DNA of 64,000 nucleotides from Oopsacas minuta (Eukaryota > Animalia > Porifera): the NCBI GenBank assembly GCA_024704765.1, contig JAKMXF010000298.1, positions 124,001-188,000 of the forward strand, written 5' to 3'. The notes under the pieces are model-generated. The model saw nothing but the letters and a program-made list of their open reading frames with translations. It was not told the DNA's origin and did not search any database. Position numbers and translations under genes: made by a program. Shown here one piece after another: positions 7,510-47,395 of the stretch (position 1 is the first letter of the stretch; every line of letters begins with the position of its first letter).

Positions 7510-8841
7510 ATGGCTTATATCAGAGTTGAAGACTCAAAACAAGATTATTCGCTAAGCAGCGTCGAAATAGCGAAAGGATATGATGAAATAAATACCGTAT
7601 TTTGTGTAGAAGATGACGAGAGTCAAAGAGCATTAGACAAAGTTAAATCTATTTTGAAACCGATAAATATTTTCCTAGTAATGATAGGATGGCGGCCGAT
7701 TAGCGTAGCTCCTTATAAGAAGAATAAATACATGCTAGCAAAGGTTTGGAATTATGTATGGCCGGTAGTAGTGTTTTGCTTGTTGGCATCAACAGTTTTA
7801 TTGCAAATTTTATCCTGTGATAAAAGGGTCGATTTCGAAAATCAATCAAATGACAGAGACAAGCTACAAAATTGTCTAAAAAATTTAGTAAGCTATTACA
7901 TATTCCCCGCTGGTCTAATTCTAGTCAGCTACACTTACATGCTTTATCTAATTCGCCGCGAGCATAGTGAGCATTTCGCGAACATCATGGAAAGAGTATT
8001 CCTACTCTACACACAGAAAAGAGGGAGGTTATCCCAATCCACCTTAAAACGCACTGTAGCAATATTCTTCTTAATGAGCATCTGTTGGTTAATATTTTCC
8101 AGTTTATTGCTAATACTGAGGAGTATATTAAACATCACTTATAAAACAACAGACCTAAAATCTATATTGAATAATGAAACCGGTACTCAGCCTCTACAGA
8201 TATTAACAATAGTCGTAGAACCTATTCCAATCGCCTTATACGACCTATTCTACGTATCACAGTTGCTCTCATACAGCTTACAAGCTCAGCTCCTGATTTA
8301 CTATTTCAACGGGCTGTATAATCGAATAAAATTTAATGAAGTAAAGCTACAAGATGCAATACAAGAGATAGGACATGCTTCAGAGGCTCTGGGGCAATTA
8401 AATGGGAAAATAGCATTTTCAGTGTCTCTAGTGATTATCAATGTTACCATGGGACTAGCTAATACTATCCACCAGCTATTGAACAGTGTACACGCAGAAC
8501 CAATACGGGCTATGCTTGTAATATACGGGTTATTATCATCTCTTCGGTGGATAATGATACTATATGTACCGCTAATACAAGCAATGCTAATAACCATCGG
8601 TACAAAACGTGTAATGCATGTAGGATTAATATTAAAAACTAGACCGTATGGATATGCAGAAACGTCACAGGAAGAACTTAACTACTTTCAACTCTACACC
8701 AGTCATCTACAATTGAGAGGGAAACTATTCGCTATACCTATCTATCCATGGGTTGTATCGTTAATTGTGTTAGGGCAGCTATCAGCACTATTACTATGGC
8801 TTAATATTGATCCAGATATCCATGCTCTATATTGGTTGTAA
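7510..8841 (+). CDS. Multi-pass membrane protein, candidate gustatory-receptor-like (7TMIC/GRL) family
   Basis: 443 aa, no signal peptide, about 7 hydrophobic segments. N-terminal LKPINIFLVMIGWRP; C-terminal EELNYFQLYTSHLQLRGKLFAIPI followed by a final TM, resembling the GR IL3-TM7 layout. Confidence 0.55.
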   Translation: MAYIRVEDSKQDYSLSSVEIAKGYDEINTVFCVEDDESQRALDKVKSILKPINIFLVMIGWRPISVAPYKKNKYMLAKVWNYVWPVVVFCLLASTVLLQILSCDKRVDFENQSNDRDKLQNCLKNLVSYYIFPAGLILVSYTYMLYLIRREHSEHFANIMERVFLLYTQKRGRLSQSTLKRTVAIFFLMSICWLIFSSLLLILRSILNITYKTTDLKSILNNETGTQPLQILTIVVEPIPIALYDLFYVSQLLSYSLQAQLLIYYFNGLYNRIKFNEVKLQDAIQEIGHASEALGQLNGKIAFSVSLVIINVTMGLANTIHQLLNSVHAEPIRAMLVIYGLLSSLRWIMILYVPLIQAMLITIGTKRVMHVGLILKTRPYGYAETSQEELNYFQLYTSHLQLRGKLFAIPIYPWVVSLIVLGQLSALLLWLNIDPDIHALYWL

Positions 8842-37524: not shown

Positions 37525-40050
37525 TTACAGCTTGTCTAGGAAGCGGTCTAGTGGTGGGATAGCTTCAGCTAGAGCCTTGCGTTTACGTGTTTCAGTTACG
37601 ACAATTGATGCTTTGTTTGACGCTCCTGCTTCCATTGGGTCTCCCGGGAGAAGCTGCCAATGATCGAATACGCATTGAGGGAAGGCCTGTCCGCCTGTAT
37701 TACTCCTTAGATCAGCTGTAAAGCCAAAAGATTCATTGACAGGTAGGTAAGATTTGATGACAAACATGGGTGTACCTTCCTGTTGATACTCTTCGAACAC
37801 ATGACCTCTCCTACGGTTCAAAACACCATAAATACCACCTACAGCTGTCTCAGGGCACTGTATTTCGCAGAGATACACTGGTTCTAGAATCCTAGGTGCT
37901 GCAGTTAAGATACTAGCGTAGAATACACGTCTAGCTGTAGGTATAATCTGACCACCACCTCTGTGTATTGTGTCTGTATGAAGTGATACGTCATAGATGT
38001 TGCAACGAATCCCACGGCAATTTTCATCACAAAGAACTCCCTCCTTACTCGCCCACTGGAAACCGGCTACCACGCTATCTTTAATCTCATTCAAGTACTG
38101 TACACCCTTTGTACAATCCACAAGCATATTGGGACCAGTTCCATCCGGACCGAATCCCCAGATCTTTCGAGCTTCACTCACATCCCACTCATACTTATCA
38201 GCAAGATATCTAGCTCGAGCTTTAGCCTCCCCGTTAGGCTCTACTTCTCCGTCATCAATATCCTCGGCTATCCCTTCAGTCAGTGGTTGGGCTTTACAGA
38301 AAAGTCGATTATGTTTATTAGCAGATTTTGATAAACACATTTGACTACTCATCTCTGATATAGTCTCACGATACGATACAACTGGATCGGATTTCTTTAT
38401 AGGGATACCAGCATGATCTTCTTCCAGATCTTTTAAGCAAATCTCGAGATGAAGTTCACCCGCACCAGCAATAATATGCTCCCCTGACTCTTCATTAAAA
38501 CACTGTACCATAGGATCAGACTTAGCCAAGCGTTTTATCCCTTCAACAAGTTTTGGCAGATCCGTAGCATTCTTAGGCTCAACTGCAACACGTACAACAG
38601 GACTGACACTGAATTTCATAACACGCATGTTATGTGCCTGATCAAATGTAGTAATGGTTCCTGTCTTTACTAGAAATTGATCAATCCCAACTAGACCAAC
38701 TATATTACCACATGGCACATCCTCAATAGCTTCAACAGTTCTACCCATCATCAATACGGTACGCTGGATACTCTTATTGTAAAGATCTTCCTTCTTTCCA
38801 GGTTTGAAGTTAGGTCCCATGATTCGTACCTTCTGTCCTGTGGAGACTGTACCGGAGAACACACGGCCGAATGCGTAGAAGCGTCCCTTATCTGTGGTGG
38901 GTACCATCTTGGACACGTACATACAGAGAGGAGCTTCAGGATCACAGTTCTTTACACCAATAGCCAGGATATCATCCTTTGGTCCTTCGTACAACATTTC
39001 CATACGGTATTTTTGTGCTGTAACGGGAGAAGGAAGATGAATGGTAATCATTTGGAGGAGAGTTTCACCCGCGGGTAACCAGCGACGCATACATAACTTC
39101 AACAGAGGTTTACCTTCAAGCTTTTGCTCCTCAATATTCAATTTGATTTTGAGCTTCTGGATTAGTTTAGTTGATTCGTCTTTTTTGAAGTTCATAATAG
39201 AATGGAATAGTTTGTAGATAGGATCAAGGATTAGCATACAAAACCCGCGTTCATATCCTGGACCAGATTCTTTCTTCCATTTCTTATCAGTAGAGCTGTA
39301 GAACTGATCGTCCCATAGACGTTTCATCAATTTTTTGGGCTCAAGTTTGAATTTCTCAACGTATATTTCAGCGAATTGTTTCAAGGTAAATGCCCAACCA
39401 TGCAGACCAGATCCGAAACCAACTGTACCATCACTCGGGGTAACCGTGATATCTCCCATGGGTGTGTCTTCACCGTATGTCTGGATAATGACGTTTACGC
39501 TCTCAACGATACGATTGAATTTCTGATACAAATCCTCTTTATCCAATTGAAGTTCAAGCAGTGCACGGTCCATCTTGTTCATGAATAGGATAGGCTTGAT
39601 TCGTTCTGCGATAGCTTGTCGTAGTACTGTACCTGTCTGTACGCAGACACCGCTGACGCAATCAACCACGACTAGAGCACCGTCTGTTACACGTAGAGCA
39701 GCTGTTACTTCCGAGGAGAAGTCGACATGTCCAGGGGAATCGATCAAATTGATGAGGAAGCCATTTCCTTCCGATTGCTGTAATACGTAATCCATATCTT
39801 CCTTCTTCAGTTCGTAGTAGAGGGAAATAGCGGTCGACTTGATGGTGATACAGCGTTCTTGTTCATCTTTACGCGTGTCAGTGTATCGCATGTCTCCTGC
39901 ACGTTCACCAGCGATGATACCGGCTTTGGAGACCAGCGAGTCGGTTAGTGTTGACTTCCCATGATCAACGTGAGCAATGACTGACATGTTTCGGATGTTA
40001 GTCCGCTTGCTCATGATGGCGCGAACTTGTTCGATGGTAAAGTTGACCAT
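37525..40050 (-). CDS. EEF2: Eukaryotic translation elongation factor 2, intronless
   Basis: [13 protein letters not shown]; [14 protein letters not shown]; [16 protein letters not shown]; NKMD; diphthamide loop [14 protein letters not shown]. Confidence 0.99.
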
Positions 40051-40814
40051 GATGATGGTAATCGAATAGTAATTTTTCCCCCTAAGTAACTAATATATTA
40101 TCATTAAAATTTGATAAAAATGTAAAATCGATCGCGATCCAAAATAGAATGGTAACTTGAGGGAAAATTTGATATTCATCACACAAAACTCATGGGTCAT
40201 TATGAATTTATGATAGTAACATTAGAAAAAGTAGAGTAAATTAATGATTCGCCTAGCAAAAACGTATCCTAATTACCTGAAATGTGGATTGAAATTTCCC
40301 AAAATAAAGTTGGGGGGTTAAAATTAGAAACGAAGAAGTGGATAAAAATAGAGCATTGAAAATTAAGGCAAGCTTATGAACATAGAGCTTATGGGTTAAT
40401 TAAAAGTTACTATTCTTATATACTTTGTGTTCTAAAATAGATATCACTTACTCCACAGCACCTGCATAGCCAAATGTATTACACTAAATTTAGAATTTTC
40501 TAAATATAGAAATCACGAGAAAAATGATGTCATATAAAATGCAATGATTTTAGTGTGTAGCTGGTATATCGAATTCCTTAGTAGTTTCTAGCTTAGCTAC
40601 TACTAATCAGGGTAAGATAGTGTCAGATTGGATAATGTATTTTACGTAAAAGCTATAGGGCAAATTAATGGTGAAAGAAGGGCGGTACGAACCTAACTAA
40701 TTACTTCATGGTATAATTGCAATTTATCGAGGGATGGGAGGAATTCTGGTTATATATTAGCTGCATAGCGTGCGTAATTGTGAACTAGTCCATAACATTA
40801 TACTTTCGGGATTA

Positions 40815-40987
40815 CAGTGTAACCTCCACAAACGAGGTGCCAGGGGGGGGCGAAAATCTTACCCCGTTCCACTCGTTTCTACCAAATTCTCCGTTGATGG
40901 AGGTTCATTTGAACGGGAGTAGGAATTCGCTCTAGATATTTATAATTCACTCAGTTTCCACAGGCCACGTTTGTGGAGGTTTCACTG
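40815..40987. mobile_element. MITE family B (173 bp, about 21-bp TIRs, TA target-site duplication)
   Basis: TA|cagtgtaacctccacaaacg ... cgtttgtggaggtttcactg|TA; a single mismatch between the TIRs. Confidence 0.88.
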
Positions 40988-41173
40988 TAACCTTGCAAAT
41001 AGCACAATATTTTCCTATTGATCATTAGTTCCACATAATCCTATAGCTTACAAATCCGTGTAAAAATAGAATGTGACTTGCAACTTAATATAGCGAACAC
41101 AAGCCTATAGTAATATTCTAATAATAATATGCAAGTTAATTGAGTAAGAAATCAATTGCCTGAACAATTGGAA

Positions 41174-44100
41174 ATGAAAACTATTTGGTACACATTTGTT
41201 TATCTTCTAATAGCATTCACTCCCTTGGCTGTGTCACAAACAATCTGTTACGGACAAGATTTCATACTCGAACATGAAAATACAACTCTACTCCTCTCGC
41301 AGCTACAAACATACTTCAGTAACTGCGAATATGTGTACGATAATCTTGAAATAGTGTTCACTGAAATGATAATTATCCCAGCGGAGTTTTCAATGATATT
41401 TAGTTCAATTCGAGAAATCAGAGGGTATTTACTTCTAGAAAACATTGAAGCAGATTCTCTAACTTTTACTGAACTCGTAATTATAAGAGGAATGAATAGT
41501 TTTGCGGTAAACAACACGTCAAATGCGTTAGTGTTAAAAAACACTAAAATAAACTCGATAATATTCCCAAATTTTAGAGAAATATCACAACATGATGTAA
41601 CAGTATATAACAGTCAATCAAATATTTCAACAGCTTGTAATCTCAATGGAGTAAACTGGGCTGATATCCTGAACCAATCTCCTAGCCAAAAAATCAATTT
41701 CAATATTACTAATTGCACCACACCAAATTGTGTAGCATGCACATCAGGTTTTTGCTGGAATGAAAATAATTGCCAATTGCTCACAAAAGAACCATGTAGT
41801 TCGTGTAGTGACAGATGTCTGCCAACTGACAACACATCCTGTTGTGACCAAGAGTGCAGTGCAGGTTGTGAAGGAGCAATATCAACTTGTGTAGCATGCT
41901 CTTCATGTCAAGATTTGACACTACCAATAACATGCATATCATCATGTGCTGATCCAAGCGCTAAAATAATTACGACTTTTCTTTCACCGCCTCGACTGGA
42001 CGGACAAGGTACATGCATATCTCCACTAATCCTAGAAAATCCCAATTTAGACTTTTGCAAAAAAGAATGCAATGAAGTCAATACAATGTGTGTTGAGGGG
42101 GTCGGATCGAATATGCTAAGCTGTAGAGTATGTGGATTAAATGAGGATGTATGTGGACAACCTTATACTCTAGCTAATAACGAAATAGGCCCAGCTCTCC
42201 TTGTACCAATTATACCAAAGTTATCTTGTGGAATTATACCCATATTCGTAAGCATAAGATTAAACATGGATAGTTTTAATCATATAAACCCAGTTACTCC
42301 TGTGTATTTAGAAGTGTTCAATGGTTTGTTAGAGATCAGTGATTATCTAGTGATAGAAGATTATCCGAGTTTCTACGGCGAAGCATTCACATTTTTAAGT
42401 CAGTTAACAAGAATAAGAGGTGATACACTATACATGGGTTTGTATGCAGTGTATATCAGGGGTAACGCATTCAGGGAAATCGATTTGAGAAATCTACAGT
42501 TCATTGACCAAGGCTCTATTCTGATTGAGAATAATACAGAACTGTGTTATCTACCAACTAGCTCAGGTTTTGAAAGTTTAAGATCTGGGATATCGGTATC
42601 AATTCTAGGTCAGGATTTAAACTGTCCATGTCATATTAATTGTGAACAGAGTGAAGGTTGCTGGGGGCCCTCTAATACACAATGCATTATATGTGCTCAA
42701 GTTCAAATAAGCAGTACTTGTCAAGAGAACTGCGAATCTTTACCAAACACATTCGCAGATTTAACAAACAGACAATGCGTTCCATGCGATGTAGAGTGTA
42801 ATAACTGTACAGGAATTGCTACGAACTGTACTCAATGCATAAATGTACGTTATGAAGGCGAATGCATACCTGAATGTCCTACAACGACATACGAAACAAA
42901 TGGAGAATGTTTACCATGTAATGATAACTGCAAAACAAATAATATCACAGGGCCAATATGCTCAGGTCCAACTAATATGTTTGGCTTAGCTTTCAATGGC
43001 TGTAACGAATGCAGTTTGTATACATTCGAAAGCACAAACAACTCAACAATATCAAACTACACATGTATTTCTATATGTATAGGAGGTTATCAAGAGTTTG
43101 ACACTTCACCTAGTCCCGTTTGTAGAGATTGTAATTCTGCTTGTACGAGATGTACTGGCCGACGAGTAGAAGATTGTGACATAGATAGTTGCACATTTTT
43201 CTTACAAGAAAACGATCAGCAATGTACATTGACATGCTCTAACTCCACACAGTATAGCCCTGCAAATAACACATGCAGGAATTGTGATGATAATTGCATT
43301 GGATGTAATGGAGAAACTAGTATGGATTGTAATGAATGTAGATTCTTGAGCAGAGGATCTGAGTGCGTTTCAAGTTGTAGAAACAATGAATACATAACCA
43401 GTAGCAATGAATGTGAATTATGTAATCAAGAACTATGTAGTACATGCAGTGTATCACGAGATAATTGCACGAGTTGTTCAAAAGCTGCCTTCAGCCAGAA
43501 CGACACATTAATTTGCTTGGAAATGTGTCCAGCAGGCTACTACAGAGCTGGTAACATATCGTGTTTAACCTGCAATAGAGAATGCATTAACTGTACTGAA
43601 GCTCTAGACACTGACTGTCAAGGTTGTAGGAATTTTCATGTCTTACCAGAAGATAGATGTGCAAGTGAATGTCCATTAGGTGCAATGGTAATGAATGCTA
43701 CTAAAACCTGTCTTGTCATAGACACATTTTTACAGCCCGCAGTTATAGCCGGATTAAGCGTAGGAGCTATTGTATTCCTTGCCATAGTGTGTAGTGTCAT
43801 AACCGCGATTATAATAGCCACTGTATGCAGTAGGAGGTATAAAAAGAAACTAGTCACGAAGGAAAGAATGGAAGAAGGTACTCTCCTCCCAATGAGAGAA
43901 AAGGGACAAATCCAGCGGACTATACAAGGATTACCTGAATTTACACTACTAGGCTATAATTATGAAACACTAGATGACGTCACGCCTAAAGATTTCCCTC
44001 TTACAATAATAGACCGCAGTTATCTTGAGCCTCGAGAGCGAATTGGGAAAGGTTTTCACAGTTATGTGTATGCTAACTTTTATACACATAAAGTAGGGGA

Positions 44101-45403
44101 AGCATTTCCTGTTGCAGTTAAAACTTTCTATGAAGTAAGTTTGAAAGATAATTATCAAGCCGGATTTGACCATGTTATAAGGGATATGTCGAAAATGTCA
44201 CATCCATCTTTTGTACAGATTTTCGGTTATAATACGGCGAAACCTGACCCTTATATTGTCACACAACTCTTAATTGGACCATCTCTTCACACGCTTTTTT
44301 CGCAATATCCTGGAACAATCAGTGAAGAGAAAATATTCAACTTCATAGCTCAAATAAATGATGGAATGCTGTATTTAGAAAGTCACAAATTAGTATACGG
44401 AAATCTCACAGCAAGAAATGTACTCCTCGTTAACCATGATGAAATAAAACTGACAGATTACTTTATTCACAGATTTTCTGAACCCAGACCAGAAAATGTA
44501 GTCGAATTACCAATTCCTGACAGATGGATGTCTCCAGAACTCGCGCTAAGTCGTGTTCCAACACATAAATCGGATATTTGGGCTTTTGGTGTTGTATTCT
44601 GGGAGATGTTAAGTTTCGCAGAATTACCTTACAATAGAGTAGCAGATGATGACGTAGTAACCATATTACAACAAGGACAGAGATTAGCACAGCCAAAATC
44701 CTGCACCGTCGATCTCTACGGATATTTACTACAGTGTTTTATATTCGAGCCAATCGGGCGTCCTACGTTTGAGAAGTTACATAACGAATTGAAAGAAATG
44801 GCGAAAAACCCTAACAAATATATTTTCATACAAGAAGACACTATTGAAAGAATTAATATAAATACATTAGAGCCTTCTCGTATAAGTAAAGACAGTGCAA
44901 CACCTGGCAGCAAAGATAGGACATTGGTTATTGGCAATACAAACGTATGCACATTAACTCATGAGGATATTCAACCTGATGAGCTGGGCTTAGGTGAATA
45001 TATAGATGAAGAAGAAGTAAATAAAAACATTGATGAGGATGTAACACAAAATTCCCAAGATACCCATCTATTAAATGCTGAATACAGTGAAATTAGTGAA
45101 GTTGAAATAAATCAAACTGTAGTGAACGAATATGATGAAATTGACGTGACCAAACTCACAAAAGAAACTGCAGACATTGCTAGTATCCCTGAATCACAAC
45201 TGCCCCTATTTATAAGTTGTGCACCAATTAGCACTCCATTAAGTTCATTAGGTTTACCAGAAATGATATCACCTAAACATGAAGATATTGTGAACCCATA
45301 CGAAACAGTTGGAGGACAAAACAATTCAATATTCTCCCCCTATAGTGACCCTGATAACTTGGGGATTAATAGCCATGATCAACTGTTAGATAACTCTAAC
45401 TAA
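41174..45403 (+). CDS. EGFR/ErbB-like receptor tyrosine (pseudo)kinase, intronless
   Basis: Signal peptide (MKTIW...); two receptor L domains (NCEYVYDNLEI, ELVIIRG; LTRIRG..LY..YA); furin-like Cys repeats (GCWGPSNTQC); TM AVIAGLSVGAIVFLAIV; TK domain with VAVK and SDIWAFGVVFWEMLSF; Tyr-containing tail. Confidence 0.9.
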   Translation: MKTIWYTFVYLLIAFTPLAVSQTICYGQDFILEHENTTLLLSQLQTYFSNCEYVYDNLEIVFTEMIIIPAEFSMIFSSIREIRGYLLLENIEADSLTFTELVIIRGMNSFAVNNTSNALVLKNTKINSIIFPNFREISQHDVTVYNSQSNISTACNLNGVNWADILNQSPSQKINFNITNCTTPNCVACTSGFCWNENNCQLLTKEPCSSCSDRCLPTDNTSCCDQECSAGCEGAISTCVACSSCQDLTLPITCISSCADPSAKIITTFLSPPRLDGQGTCISPLILENPNLDFCKKECNEVNTMCVEGVGSNMLSCRVCGLNEDVCGQPYTLANNEIGPALLVPIIPKLSCGIIPIFVSIRLNMDSFNHINPVTPVYLEVFNGLLEISDYLVIEDYPSFYGEAFTFLSQLTRIRGDTLYMGLYAVYIRGNAFREIDLRNLQFIDQGSILIENNTELCYLPTSSGFESLRSGISVSILGQDLNCPCHINCEQSEGCWGPSNTQCIICAQVQISSTCQENCESLPNTFADLTNRQCVPCDVECNNCTGIATNCTQCINVRYEGECIPECPTTTYETNGECLPCNDNCKTNNITGPICSGPTNMFGLAFNGCNECSLYTFESTNNSTISNYTCISICIGGYQEFDTSPSPVCRDCNSACTRCTGRRVEDCDIDSCTFFLQENDQQCTLTCSNSTQYSPANNTCRNCDDNCIGCNGETSMDCNECRFLSRGSECVSSCRNNEYITSSNECELCNQELCSTCSVSRDNCTSCSKAAFSQNDTLICLEMCPAGYYRAGNISCLTCNRECINCTEALDTDCQGCRNFHVLPEDRCASECPLGAMVMNATKTCLVIDTFLQPAVIAGLSVGAIVFLAIVCSVITAIIIATVCSRRYKKKLVTKERMEEGTLLPMREKGQIQRTIQGLPEFTLLGYNYETLDDVTPKDFPLTIIDRSYLEPRERIGKGFHSYVYANFYTHKVGEAFPVAVKTFYEVSLKDNYQAGFDHVIRDMSKMSHPSFVQIFGYNTAKPDPYIVTQLLIGPSLHTLFSQYPGTISEEKIFNFIAQINDGMLYLESHKLVYGNLTARNVLLVNHDEIKLTDYFIHRFSEPRPENVVELPIPDRWMSPELALSRVPTHKSDIWAFGVVFWEMLSFAELPYNRVADDDVVTILQQGQRLAQPKSCTVDLYGYLLQCFIFEPIGRPTFEKLHNELKEMAKNPNKYIFIQEDTIERININTLEPSRISKDSATPGSKDRTLVIGNTNVCTLTHEDIQPDELGLGEYIDEEEVNKNIDEDVTQNSQDTHLLNAEYSEISEVEINQTVVNEYDEIDVTKLTKETADIASIPESQLPLFISCAPISTPLSSLGLPEMISPKHEDIVNPYETVGGQNNSIFSPYSDPDNLGINSHDQLLDNSN

Positions 45404-45468
45404 ATTACAAATATGTACAATTAACTTGTAATTGTTACTGTATATTACCTCAATATTTATGTATTAAC

Positions 45469-46941
45469 TTATTTAGTGTGTCTCTGTGCTTGCACACTAA
45501 ACTCAAATCCACCAGAAACTATCTCTTTTCCAGGTTGTGCGGTTTCTAACTGCTTCAGAACATACTCTAAAAACTCAGCTGATTTCTGATCAACAGCTGA
45601 GTTCTTTTCCTCAGTTAATGTTTGTCTTATAACATCCAATAATTCGTAATAGCCATAGCAATACGCAGCATTTTTCAGTTTGTTTAGTTCTGATAAAAAC
45701 GCAGATTGTCGTTCAGTCATCTTTTTTGCATATCTCTGTAACTTAGTGATATCTGTATGAAGAGTGTCGTATTTAAGCCAAATATGGGAAGTACCTGAAG
45801 AATAAGAAAACTCGTGATCTCTAATCGGGATTTGTGGCTTTTCAATACATCCTATTCTATCCATAGGGCCTAACAGTGGGTTAGAAGCTCCCGGGGGTAA
45901 CACTGATAATACAAGGTTAATACTGCGCTTTTTAGAATCATCATTTGTCGCGAAAATGTAAGCGAACCAATCTGGTCGAAGTTTAACAACAGCAACTTTC
46001 TCAGAGCGTAGCAATGAAGTGTAAAGAATTACACGGAGAGATGGTTGTTTGGTTAAATCTTCTTGGAAATCGACTGGTTGCTTCTCAAGCGAATTTGAAC
46101 AAGAAAGACTAACTCTTTTCGAATCAAGAATCAAATGTCGAGTTAGACAAGGAGTAAATTGAGCATCTTTACTATGAATAAATCCAAAAATATTCAATTC
46201 TTCTGGAAAAGTCTGACAAAGATTTCCACAAATTCGATAACTCTTCGAGATTTCATTAGTAAGGAAATCAACATTTGATTCAAACAGCGTCAGTGATGGT
46301 GGTGGAAACAACGAAATTTCGGATTCTTTAAATCCAAATCGGAGCATACCATTAAAAGGCAAAAACTGTGAAGCACAAAGCTGTGTAGCCAACTCAACAA
46401 CATTCGTAGATGTAATGGTATTTTCAAGAGTGTATAAGTACTCAAAAGCGTGCGTAGGATCGCGGAAAAAGTTTTTAAGTGGTTCAATTCGATGCTGTAT
46501 AGTCTCGTAATTATTTAAGAAATACCAATATACTCGACATGGGAAAGGAAATAGAATAGATTCAATTGGATTTTCTAGAATATTTGGTGGAGAAAATAAG
46601 CCATCGCTTATAATGATAAGATTCAGAGGTTGATATGAGCTCCAATCGTAATGATAACCGCGAATAAACTGTTTAATGCATTTAACTATATCTGATTTAT
46701 CACCAAAAGCATAGCACGATAAACGTTTTCTAATTTCCTCATAAGATCCAGCTGGCATTTTAACTACGCCCGAGCTAAACGTAGCAAGAGTAACGAATTC
46801 GAATTGGAAATTCTCTTTGAAATAATCGAAAATTGTAGCGACAACTTTACACGCAAAATCGAAAACACGAACACGTTCATCTATGTTGCTGATCTGCCTC
46901 CACATAGACAAAGATCGATCAAGCAGTATAATAACAGGCAT
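45469..46941 (-). CDS. INTS14: Integrator complex subunit 14 (VWA9)
   Basis: N-terminus MPVIILLDRSLSM corresponds to INTS14 MPTVVVMDVSLSM; FEFVTLATFSS; IISDG; LHTDITKLQRYAKKM...FLSELNKL..AAYCYGY. ATG at 46941. Confidence 0.82.
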   Translation of the reverse strand: MPVIILLDRSLSMWRQISNIDERVRVFDFACKVVATIFDYFKENFQFEFVTLATFSSGVVKMPAGSYEEIRKRLSCYAFGDKSDIVKCIKQFIRGYHYDWSSYQPLNLIIISDGLFSPPNILENPIESILFPFPCRVYWYFLNNYETIQHRIEPLKNFFRDPTHAFEYLYTLENTITSTNVVELATQLCASQFLPFNGMLRFGFKESEISLFPPPSLTLFESNVDFLTNEISKSYRICGNLCQTFPEELNIFGFIHSKDAQFTPCLTRHLILDSKRVSLSCSNSLEKQPVDFQEDLTKQPSLRVILYTSLLRSEKVAVVKLRPDWFAYIFATNDDSKKRSINLVLSVLPPGASNPLLGPMDRIGCIEKPQIPIRDHEFSYSSGTSHIWLKYDTLHTDITKLQRYAKKMTERQSAFLSELNKLKNAAYCYGYYELLDVIRQTLTEEKNSAVDQKSAEFLEYVLKQLETAQPGKEIVSGGFEFSVQAQRHTK

Positions 46942-47395
46942 AAAGCTATATGTAAAAGAACTGTTAATGATGAGTAGGGATAGTTGAAATCTGACCAACC
47001 GGACCGTCTCTTACGGCCATGTAATAGACTGAATCAAGATTCCCTATCCTCCCAAATAAAGTGAAATAATAGAATCAGAAATATAATCATGAATAATAAA
47101 CAAACACAAGTTATCATAATGTAAGAAGCCGAAGCTCAAAATATAAAACAAATTATACCAAATGATTATCAAAATCTGTATTATTGTGTAATTAGAAGTT
47201 TGATTCGGAGATATTACAAGAATTACAGTTAGTTTGAGATAGTAGAATATGTCCATTTGTTTGGTTGTCACATTCAGTAATTAAACATGTATTTACAAGT
47301 ATACAACTAACACTATATACACATAGAAATACGCGTAGAAAAGAGCGTTTTGAGCCGAAACATACAGTAGATATTTACATAGACATTTGTGAGCT

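What the first reader, a model, noticed from the sequence alone, without database searches (positions are those of the whole stretch)
44030..44830. ErbB/EGFR-like receptor is a pseudokinase with a HER3-like catalytic Asp-to-Asn change
Seen: the catalytic loop reads YGNLTARN instead of HRDLAARN (Asn codon at 44401); DFG reads DYF (44456); the Gly-loop is GKGFHS; no obvious alphaC Glu (GFDHVIRDM). VAVK Lys and later subdomains are intact and the 4.2-kb ORF is undisrupted, so it is not a decayed pseudogene. The tail keeps docking-type tyrosines (EYSEI, EYDEI, PYETV). Established: vertebrate ERBB3 has Asn at this position and signals as a heterodimer partner. Inference: an independent, convergent origin of a kinase-dead ErbB-like co-receptor, which implies an active partner elsewhere in the genome.
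Basis: partly seen in the sequence, partly recalled or inferred. Interest (0 to 1): 0.7.

Follow-up and report, generated by a model that had tools for sequence, protein, structure and literature searches.

The report
Glass-sponge kinase-dead EGF receptor
The glass sponge Oopsacas minuta carries an old, well-conserved EGF-receptor gene whose kinase can no longer work; it arose separately from human HER3 and probably acts, like HER3, as helper and docking platform for the sponge's one working EGF receptor.

Summary
The intron-free gene at window 41174-45403 (+) encodes a complete ErbB/EGFR-type receptor. Its kinase reads YGN for HRD, DYF for DFG and has no alphaC glutamate. Contigs from three runs of one sample match the gene exactly.

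The "HER3-like Asp-to-Asn" reading does not hold. In eight syntenic orthologues this position is N/I/I/I/L/H/L/L, so the Asn is a later change at a site that was already dead. The Gly-loop serine is also specific to this species.

The gene is a maintained pseudokinase. Kinase dN/dS is 0.10-0.18. Its C-lobe is as constrained as that of the active paralogue, while its N-lobe is about ten-fold more relaxed. All five tail tyrosines are invariant.

The ectodomain tree puts it in a sponge ErbB clade (100/99), and an AU test rejects grouping with ERBB3 (p = 3e-102).

The genome holds exactly one other ErbB, G000:C354, with all catalytic motifs intact. It occurs together with the pseudokinase in at least six species.

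Mapped onto the human EGFR asymmetric dimer, the dead copy keeps the activator face and has lost the receiver face. The active copy keeps the receiver face but has Asn or Arg at the V948 position. A complex model scored 0.80 against 0.00 for controls, with that orientation.

Inactive EGFR paralogues are already reported in vertebrates, Lottia and Schmidtea, so this is a new, non-bilaterian member of a known kind. Binding, activity and expression are untested.

The parts
41174..45403 (+). Whole intron-free gene for the kinase-dead ErbB receptor (1409 aa plus stop). The mechanical ORF starts at a TTG at 41156.
   Evidence: gene models of seven syntenic orthologues
41174..41236 (+). Probable signal peptide (MKTIWYTFVYLLIAFTPLAVS)
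   Evidence: Read from the sequence. No predictor was run.
41237..43738 (+). Ectodomain: L1, furin-like CR1, L2, domain IV and further Cys-rich repeats
   Evidence: Pfam. Best PDB matches are the Drosophila and human EGFR ectodomains. dN/dS 0.10-0.20.
43739..43831 (+). Hydrophobic stretch, taken as the transmembrane helix
   Evidence: Read from the sequence. No predictor was run.
43832..44029 (+). Juxtamembrane segment, well conserved (mean pairwise identity 66%)
   Evidence: dN/dS about 0.09-0.12 in most pairs
44030..44287 (+). Kinase N-lobe. Gly loop GKGFHS at 44045-44062 and VAVK at 44111-44122; no alphaC Glu; receiver-face positions degenerate.
   Evidence: dN/dS 0.17-0.34 against 0.013-0.037 in the active paralogue
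44288..44839 (+). Kinase C-lobe. YGN at 44396-44404 in place of HRD; DYF at 44456-44464 in place of DFG; invariant alphaH 'VDLYGYLLQCFIFEP' around 44708-44752, which is the activator-face equivalent.
   Evidence: dN/dS 0.06-0.17; forms the predicted interface
44840..45400 (+). C-terminal tail of 187 aa. It has only five tyrosines, all invariant in eight species: Y1276 (44999), Y1304 (45083), Y1320 (45131), Y1376 (45299), Y1390 (45341).

Best explanation
The gene encodes a full-length ErbB/EGFR-family receptor of the glass sponge Oopsacas minuta whose kinase domain is a pseudokinase.

Shown here:
- The catalytic Arg and Asp of HRD, the Phe-Gly of DFG and the alphaC Glu are lost in all eight orthologues found.
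- The beta3 Lys and the DFG Asp are kept in all eight. The Gly loop is kept in seven of eight and the catalytic-loop Asn in five of eight.
- The gene is under purifying selection.
- By its ectodomain it belongs to a sponge ErbB clade, separate from vertebrate ERBB3.
- The genome has exactly one other ErbB, and that one is catalytically intact.

Inferred: after ligand-driven heterodimerisation, the C-lobe of the dead receptor docks on the N-lobe, juxtamembrane latch and alphaC helix of the active paralogue. This is the EGFR-type asymmetric dimer. The dead receptor switches the active one on allosterically, and the active one then phosphorylates the five conserved tail tyrosines of the dead receptor (EY[I/V]DEE, EYSE, EYDE[I], PYE, SPY), which recruit SH2/PTB proteins.

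The active paralogue carries Asn or Arg where human EGFR has V948, the site of the engineered activator-dead V948R (V924R in mature numbering). It may therefore be a poor activator of itself and depend on the dead copy.
For: ErbB identity:
- Pfam architecture.
- Best PDB matches are ErbB4, ErbB3 and EGFR kinases at E about 1e-44, and EGFR ectodomains.

Pseudokinase status and age:
- Alignment of eight orthologues, all in the conserved order tubulin - EF2 - gene - IntS14.

Selection:
- Kinase dN/dS is 0.10-0.18 in unsaturated pairs.
- In the same species pairs, the N-lobe gives 0.17-0.24 in the dead copy against 0.013-0.037 in the active copy. The C-lobe gives 0.07-0.13 against 0.08.

Independent origin:
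- The ectodomain tree has a sponge clade at 100/99, with ERBB3 nested among vertebrate ERBB4/3.
- An AU test rejects a clade of the pseudokinases with ERBB3, p = 3.5e-102.

Partner:
- G000:C354 has GKGAFG, VAIK, KEAV, HRDLASRN and DFG and is named EGFR [Oopsacas minuta] by NCBI.
- Only two ErbB ectodomains exist in the genome.
- Both genes are found in the same five ENA samples, and their gene trees are congruent.

Interface split (the roles of I682Q and V924R were checked in PMC4902571):
- Activator face is V,Y,G,L,I, invariant in the dead copy. In the active copy it is S/T/N at 941 and N x6 or R x1 at 948.
- Receiver face is L,I,I,M,L, invariant in the active copy and degenerate in the dead copy.

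Complex model:
- ipSAE 0.80 against 0.00 for the best of 3 controls.
- That mark was reached by 51 of 78 solved complexes and 2 of 108 mismatched pairs.
- The runs agree in at least 40% of contacts, and the partner's pLDDT is at least 82.
- The interface joins the active copy's N-lobe side to the dead copy's alphaG-alphaI region.

Tail: all five tyrosines are invariant.

Fold: intact, pLDDT 84.9; the nearest solved structure is inactive-state EGFR.
Against: - No biochemical or expression data. No RNA run was found.
- The complex model may score high from memory of solved EGFR/HER3 dimers.
- The interface residues were carried over from human EGFR by alignment. It is not shown that sponges use the asymmetric-dimer mechanism.
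- M945 is Gly in the dead copy. The Sycon ErbB also has a polar activator face, and no partner is known for it.
- The kinase-domain tree alone cannot reject grouping with ERBB3 (p-AU 0.205). The dead clade sits on a very long stem (2.99).
- The retained Lys, DFG Asp and Gly loop leave room for nucleotide binding or weak activity.
Confidence: 0.6

Rival explanations
1. It is a weak or atypical kinase, not a dead one. It still binds ATP and transfers phosphate slowly without a catalytic base, as reported for HER3. This would matter for its own or its partner's phosphorylation.
For: The beta3 Lys and the DFG Asp are invariant. GxGxxG is intact in 7 of 8 orthologues and the catalytic-loop Asn in 5 of 8, even though the N-lobe is relaxed. 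Weak HER3 activity is reported by Shi et al. 2010, as cited in PMC4902571.
Against: The losses go beyond those of HER3. The HRD Arg is Gly in all eight. The base position varies freely (N/I/L/H). The DFG Phe and Gly are replaced. The alphaC Glu is absent. Three species also lose the catalytic-loop Asn.
Confidence: 0.15
2. It is a decoy or dominant-negative receptor. It captures ligand or pairs with the active ErbB without activating it, and so dampens signalling.
For: The ectodomain is complete and conserved (dN/dS 0.10-0.20) while the kinase is dead. The predicted pairing with the active copy says nothing about the sign of the effect.
Against: A decoy needs neither a C-lobe as constrained as that of an active kinase nor five invariant tail tyrosines in a tail that otherwise evolves quickly. 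The activator-face residues are invariant.
Confidence: 0.13
3. It is a scaffold that works without the ErbB paralogue. Its tail is phosphorylated by cytoplasmic kinases such as Src-family enzymes or by another receptor kinase, as with RYK, ROR or PTK7-type pseudokinase receptors.
For: The EY(S/D)EI tail motifs resemble the pYEEI-type preference of Src-family SH2 domains (from my own knowledge). O. minuta has many other receptor tyrosine kinases.
Against: The complementary activator and receiver faces in the two ErbB paralogues, their co-retention in all species where both could be looked up, and the confident heterodimer model.
Confidence: 0.1
4. It is an assembly error or a decaying pseudogene.
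For: None found.
Against: Contigs of three runs agree exactly. Intact orthologous ORFs of 1396-1413 aa exist in seven other assemblies. dN/dS is about 0.13-0.18 over the whole gene.
Confidence: 0.01

Closest known systems
Vertebrate ERBB3/HER3
   Same: A full-length ErbB receptor with a catalytically impaired kinase. It lacks the catalytic Asp and the alphaC Glu (His in ERBB3). The DFG Phe is Tyr in ERBB3 and in several of the sponge orthologues. The receiver face is degenerate and the activator face conserved. The tail serves as a docking platform. An active paralogue acts as partner.
   Different: Separate origin: a sponge clade against a clade nested in vertebrate ERBB4/3. ERBB3 keeps HRN and DYG. 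The sponge protein has also lost the HRD Arg and the DFG Gly, and its base position is unconstrained (N/I/L/H). Its tail has five EY-type motifs rather than ERBB3's YxxM sites (the latter from my own knowledge). Its partner seems to have lost its own activator face; in this alignment all 29 non-sponge active ErbBs keep a hydrophobic residue at 948.
Putatively inactive EGFR paralogues of Schmidtea mediterranea and Lottia gigantea (Barberan et al. 2016, PMC4914847)
   Same: Lineage-specific duplication of EGFR followed by loss of kinase motifs in one copy, read as independent evolution of HER3-like regulation.
   Different: Those are bilaterian (spiralian) cases described from single species. 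This one is in a non-bilaterian. It is shown here to be conserved with synteny across eight species and to be under purifying selection, and its interfaces are complementary to those of the partner.
Sponge EGFRs already on record: the single active Amphimedon queenslandica EGFR, Halisarca dujardinii 'EGFR 2' and a Sycon ciliatum ErbB
   Same: Same family. Halisarca EGFR2 falls in the same sponge ectodomain clade. Barberan 2016 lists one active EGFR for Amphimedon.
   Different: Halisarca EGFR2 and the Sycon ErbB keep HRD, DFG and the alphaC Glu, and Amphimedon's is listed as active. None is a pseudokinase.

Membership tests
ErbB/EGFR receptor tyrosine kinase family | Ectodomain made of L1, furin-like Cys-rich, L2 and domain IV | tested here: met
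   Pfam finds Recep_L x2, Furin-like and GF_recep_IV above their cut-offs. Best PDB matches are EGFR ectodomains at E 8e-47 to 1e-35.
ErbB/EGFR receptor tyrosine kinase family | Tyrosine-kinase-fold domain closest to ErbB kinases and placed in the ErbB clade | tested here: met
   ErbB4, ErbB3 and EGFR are the top PDB hits. It lies inside the ErbB clade against Ack, Syk and Fer outgroups at 99/92. The predicted fold matches EGFR.
ErbB/EGFR receptor tyrosine kinase family | Single transmembrane helix between ectodomain and kinase | tested here: inconclusive
   A hydrophobic stretch at residues 856-886 is followed by basic RRYKKK. No transmembrane predictor was run.
Pseudokinase (lacks at least one of the beta3 Lys, HRD Asp or DFG Asp) | Catalytic Asp of HRD absent | tested here: met
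   N/I/I/I/L/H/L/L in eight orthologues. The HRD Arg is Gly in all.
Pseudokinase (lacks at least one of the beta3 Lys, HRD Asp or DFG Asp) | No phosphotransfer activity | not testable with these tools
   Needs a kinase assay.
ERBB3/HER3 orthology group | Falls within the vertebrate ERBB3 clade | tested here: not met
   In the ectodomain tree ERBB3 is nested among vertebrate ErbBs and the sponge proteins form a separate clade at 100/99. AU p = 3.5e-102 against the union. The kinase domain alone is inconclusive (p = 0.205).
ERBB3/HER3 orthology group | Conserved HRN catalytic loop (Asp to Asn) | tested here: not met
   Asn is present in 1 of 8 orthologues, and the Arg is lost in all.
HER3-like allosteric activator (a way of working, not descent) | Activator (C-lobe) face conserved while the receiver (N-lobe) face has decayed | tested here: met
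   Position mapping. In the same species pairs the C-lobe dN/dS equals that of the active paralogue, and the N-lobe is about ten times higher.
HER3-like allosteric activator (a way of working, not descent) | Forms an asymmetric kinase dimer with an active ErbB and activates it | tested here: inconclusive
   The model scores 0.80 against 0.00 for controls, with the expected interface. This may come from memory of solved ErbB dimers. No experiment.
HER3-like allosteric activator (a way of working, not descent) | Tail tyrosines are phosphorylated in trans and recruit adaptors | not testable with these tools
   Only conservation was shown: 5 of 5 tail tyrosines invariant.

The most novel reading that the evidence does not exclude
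The two glass-sponge ErbB genes may form an obligate, fully divided pair. One copy is activator-only: dead kinase, decayed receiver face, invariant activator face and a docking tail. The other is receiver-only: active kinase and intact receiver face, but an activator face disabled by Asn or Arg at the human V948 position. Neither could then signal alone. This would be a natural counterpart of the engineered I682Q/V924R complementation pair. It would also show that the EGFR asymmetric-dimer mechanism predates the split between sponges and bilaterians.
Probability: 0.3. Interest if true: 0.75.

Novelty: new member of a known kind. Interest (0 to 1): 0.58.

Why it matters
Kinase-dead ErbB co-receptors are known from vertebrates (HER3, a cancer drug target) and have been suggested for two spiralians. 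A separately evolved case in glass sponges, conserved across at least eight species, would show that pairing a dead activator with a live receiver is a repeated outcome of ErbB gene duplication.

If the interface reading is right, the allosteric asymmetric-dimer mechanism was already present in the common ancestor of sponges and bilaterians.

The pair also looks like a natural experiment in which the two roles have been divided between two genes. That can be tested directly with recombinant intracellular domains.

Tried and rejected
- The kinase-domain tree could not settle the question. The pseudokinase clade sits on a stem of 2.99 changes per column in an unresolved position. AU tests reject neither grouping with ERBB3 (p = 0.205) nor grouping with the active sponge clade (p = 0.327). 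I used the ectodomain instead.
- The timing of the duplication stays open: within glass sponges, or before the split from demosponges. Halisarca EGFR2 joins the active clade with only 86/73 support.
- The last word search, with a profile of sponge ErbBs, found no further sponge ErbBs. Candidates were capped at 8000.
- The list from the exhaustive profile search is crowded with multi-kinase proteins. It showed no relative scoring between the pseudokinase cluster (625 bits) and ordinary ErbBs (269 bits or less) other than the active paralogue.
- No run on record as RNA holds the gene, so expression is unknown.
- The contig table was cut, so I could not read the catalytic codons in the roughly 95%-identical relative, run X5.
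- I could not name the species behind the seven ENA assemblies. A search for SAMN14422898 found nothing, and the link to the Vazella project was my own guess and stays unverified.
- The O. minuta genome paper does not discuss EGFR or tyrosine kinases.
- Assembly error and pseudogene were rejected.
No spliced model was needed, because the gene has no introns.
Full report
**What is there.** Window 41156-45403 (+) is one open frame. The database gene model starts at the ATG at 41174 and gives 1409 aa. Pfam finds two Receptor-L domains, a furin-like region, growth-factor-receptor domain IV and a tyrosine-kinase domain at residues 960-1212. The kinase domain's best solved relatives are ErbB4, ErbB3 and EGFR, at E about 1e-44 to 1e-41. 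The ectodomain's best relatives are the Drosophila and human EGFR ectodomains. This is a true ErbB-family receptor.

**Organism.** The genome has 61.46 Mb in 365 contigs. Its second ErbB gene is 100% identical to an NCBI protein named [quoted passage not shown], on a contig of the same length, 1,096,098 bases. The organism is therefore the glass sponge O. minuta, as earlier notes of this scan also said.

**The observation.** Direct reading confirms:
- D-Y-F at 44456-44464;
- GKGFHS and VAVK.

Aligned to EGFR, the alphaC Glu position holds His or Val depending on the alignment, never Glu. Contigs from three runs of one sample cover 40300-46200, intergenic DNA included, with no differences in the gene. 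They look like DNA runs and may be the assembly's own source.

**Orthologues change the reading.**
- A word search found seven proteins of 1396-1413 aa, 58-72% identical in the kinase region.
- Each lies in another ENA assembly in the same gene order, tubulin - EF2 - this gene - IntS14, as a single uninterrupted ORF. I take these assemblies for related glass sponges, but their records carry no species names.
- All eight have Gly for the HRD Arg and none has the catalytic Asp. That position reads N (O. minuta), I, I, I, L, H, L, L, with codons AAT, ATA x3, CTA, CAC and CTT x2.
- On the gene tree the likely ancestral state is Leu or Ile. The Asn of O. minuta can be reached from Leu through His in single steps. 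It is therefore a later change at a site that was already dead, not a HER3-style Asp-to-Asn event.
- DFG reads DYF, DCF, DSL, DYL or DFF.
- The beta3 Lys and the DFG Asp are invariant.
- GxGxxG is intact in seven of eight orthologues. The Ser in GKGFHS is peculiar to O. minuta.
- The catalytic-loop Asn is kept in five of eight.

**Selection.**
- Nei-Gojobori dN/dS in pairs with unsaturated dS is 0.10-0.18 for the kinase domain, 0.10-0.20 for the ectodomain and 0.22-0.35 for the tail.
- I fetched the active paralogue from the same samples and compared the same species pairs.
- N-lobe: 0.17 and 0.24 in the dead copy against 0.037 and 0.013 in the active copy.
- C-lobe: 0.068 and 0.125 in the dead copy against 0.081 and 0.076 in the active copy.
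- So the C-lobe of the dead kinase is held as tightly as that of a working kinase, while its N-lobe is roughly ten-fold relaxed.
- The 187-residue tail is the fastest-evolving part (51% mean identity). It contains exactly five tyrosines, and all five are invariant in eight species, each in a small conserved island: LGLGEY(I/V), EYSE, EYDE(I), PYE and SPY.

**Origin.**
- An exhaustive profile search of 1.84 billion representatives found nothing between the pseudokinase cluster (625 bits), the active sponge paralogue (420 bits; it was part of the profile) and ordinary ErbBs (269 bits or less).
- I named representatives by cluster look-up: erbB-3b, erbB-2, erbB-4, a lamprey ErbB4-like protein, crinoid and hemichordate EGFRs, Halisarca dujardinii "EGFR 2" and a Sycon ciliatum ErbB.
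- In the kinase-domain tree the eight pseudokinases form a clade (100/100) on a very long stem (2.99). They lie outside the main bilaterian clade (96/90; the nematode EGFRs fall outside it too), but their exact position is unresolved. AU tests could not reject a union with ERBB3 (p = 0.205) or with the active sponge clade (p = 0.327).
- The ectodomain is not affected by kinase decay and is decisive. The pseudokinases, the active glass-sponge ErbBs and Halisarca EGFR2 form one clade at 100/99. ERBB3 is nested among vertebrate ERBB4/3. The AU test rejects a pseudokinase-ERBB3 clade at p = 3.5e-102.
- The dead copy therefore arose from a duplication inside the sponge lineage. Whether that duplication predates the split between glass sponges and demosponges is unresolved (86/73 support).

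**The partner.**
- A six-frame search of the whole genome with the kinase domain gives one clearly closest paralogue, on G000:C354, about 724134-730043 (-).
- That gene encodes a 1969-aa ErbB with GKGAFG, VAIK, the alphaC Glu (KEAV), HRDLASRN and DFG intact. Its 694-residue tail holds 44 tyrosines, including about 18 tandem ERTA..EYL(E/D) units.
- A search with the L1-CR1-L2 part of the ectodomain finds only these two genes.
- The active gene has orthologues at 77-88% kinase identity. They lie in the same samples as five of the pseudokinase orthologues. The two gene trees have matching topologies.

**How it probably works.**
- In human EGFR the kinase is switched on when the C-lobe of an "activator" molecule docks on the N-lobe of a "receiver". 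I682Q (N-lobe) and V924R (C-lobe), in mature numbering, disable the receiver and activator roles respectively. This comes from Zhang et al. 2006, as used in PMC4902571.
- The full lists of five residues per face (L704, I706, L760, L782, V786 and I941, Y944, M945, V948, M952 in precursor numbering) are from my memory of that work. I anchored the numbering on a fish EGFR and checked it against ten landmark residues.
- Across 29 non-sponge ErbBs in the alignment, eight of these ten positions are always hydrophobic. At 786 and 941 a few carry T, P, Q or C.
- Active sponge copy: the receiver face is L, I, I, M, L, invariant. The activator face is polar at 941 (S/T/N) and at 948 (Asn in six species, Arg in one). 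The Arg is the same residue as the engineered activator-dead mutation.
- Dead copy: the activator face is V, Y, G, L, I, invariant in eight species. The receiver face has decayed: position 706 is I/E/E/V/R/R/K/V, 760 is acidic or Ser, 782 is small or polar, and 786 is Pro.
- ERBB3 shows the same kind of receiver-face decay (A, I, T, P, L).

**Complex and fold models.**
- I modelled the active copy's juxtamembrane segment and kinase together with the dead kinase domain. The score was 0.80, against 0.00 for the best of 3 controls.
- That mark was reached by 51 of 78 solved complexes and 2 of 108 mismatched pairs. The runs agree in at least 40% of contacts, and the partner's pLDDT is at least 82.
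- The confident contacts are the active copy's N-terminal extension (EADMTQL-VIADL), alphaC helix and beta4-beta5 loop. They touch the dead copy's alphaG-alphaH-alphaI region (QQGQR..VDL.GY..QC.IFEP). That makes the active copy the receiver and the dead copy the activator.
- Solved EGFR/HER3 dimers exist, so this pass shows likeness to them, not binding.
- The dead domain folds confidently on its own (pLDDT 84.9, pTM 0.86). It most resembles inactive-state EGFR structures.

**What is known already.**
- Barberan et al. 2016 (PMC4914847) surveyed EGFRs across animals. They list one active EGFR for the sponge Amphimedon. They report putatively inactive kinase domains in vertebrates, Lottia gigantea and Schmidtea mediterranea, and read these as independent evolution of HER3-like regulation.
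- The O. minuta genome paper does not mention EGFR or tyrosine kinases.
- The general idea is therefore known. What is new is a non-bilaterian case with evidence of age, synteny, selection and a defined partner, plus the apparent division of activator and receiver roles between the two genes.

**Verdict.** Binding, activation, phosphorylation of the tail and expression are all inferred, not shown.

Noticed in passing
window 40811-40989: A short repeat about 200-360 bp upstream of the gene's start. Many contigs from elsewhere in the genome match it at 85-90% identity, summed depth rises more than ten-fold, and there are many loose ends and 'skips'. It looks like a dispersed MITE-like element.
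   Followed up: no
L033:1501-9348 (P0016) and L034:1501-9633 (P0013): In two other assemblies the active ErbB orthologue is one ORF of 2615 or 2710 aa holding two complete ectodomains in frame. The upstream copy is almost identical to the downstream copy of the same species (branch lengths 0.001-0.02). The junctions differ between the two species. This is either a recent independent internal duplication or a long-read assembly artefact. O. minuta has only one copy.
   Followed up: partly
G000:C354, L022:4135-5500 (-): The tail of the active ErbB holds about 18 tandem units of roughly 15-17 aa ending in ERTA..EYL(E/D), and 44 tyrosines in 694 residues. This is a very large array of possible docking sites. 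The scan noted it separately as s1-309888.
   Followed up: partly
L022:1024-2655 (+) and L034:11055-11133 (-): An ORF of about 545-552 aa lies a few kb downstream of the active ErbB gene in O. minuta and in one other species. In L034 it carries the hAT dimerisation domain (PF05699). The L022 ORF was not scanned, so its hAT assignment rests on position and size only. Conserved position would suggest a domesticated transposase rather than a mobile copy.
   Followed up: no
window 37525-40050 (-) and 45469-46998 (-): The flanking genes are an intron-free elongation factor 2 (841 aa) and an Integrator subunit 14-like gene. This order is kept in all seven other assemblies.
   Followed up: partly
P0233 (Sycon ciliatum ErbB): This calcareous-sponge ErbB has intact catalytic motifs and an intact receiver face, but polar residues at three activator-face positions (R945, T948, T952). 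Role splitting might not be limited to glass sponges. No partner was looked for.
   Followed up: no
run X5 on window 43227-44615: A run from a different organism and study holds low-depth contigs about 95% identical to the gene (67 differences in 1389 bases). This points to a close relative or a divergent population of O. minuta.
   Followed up: no
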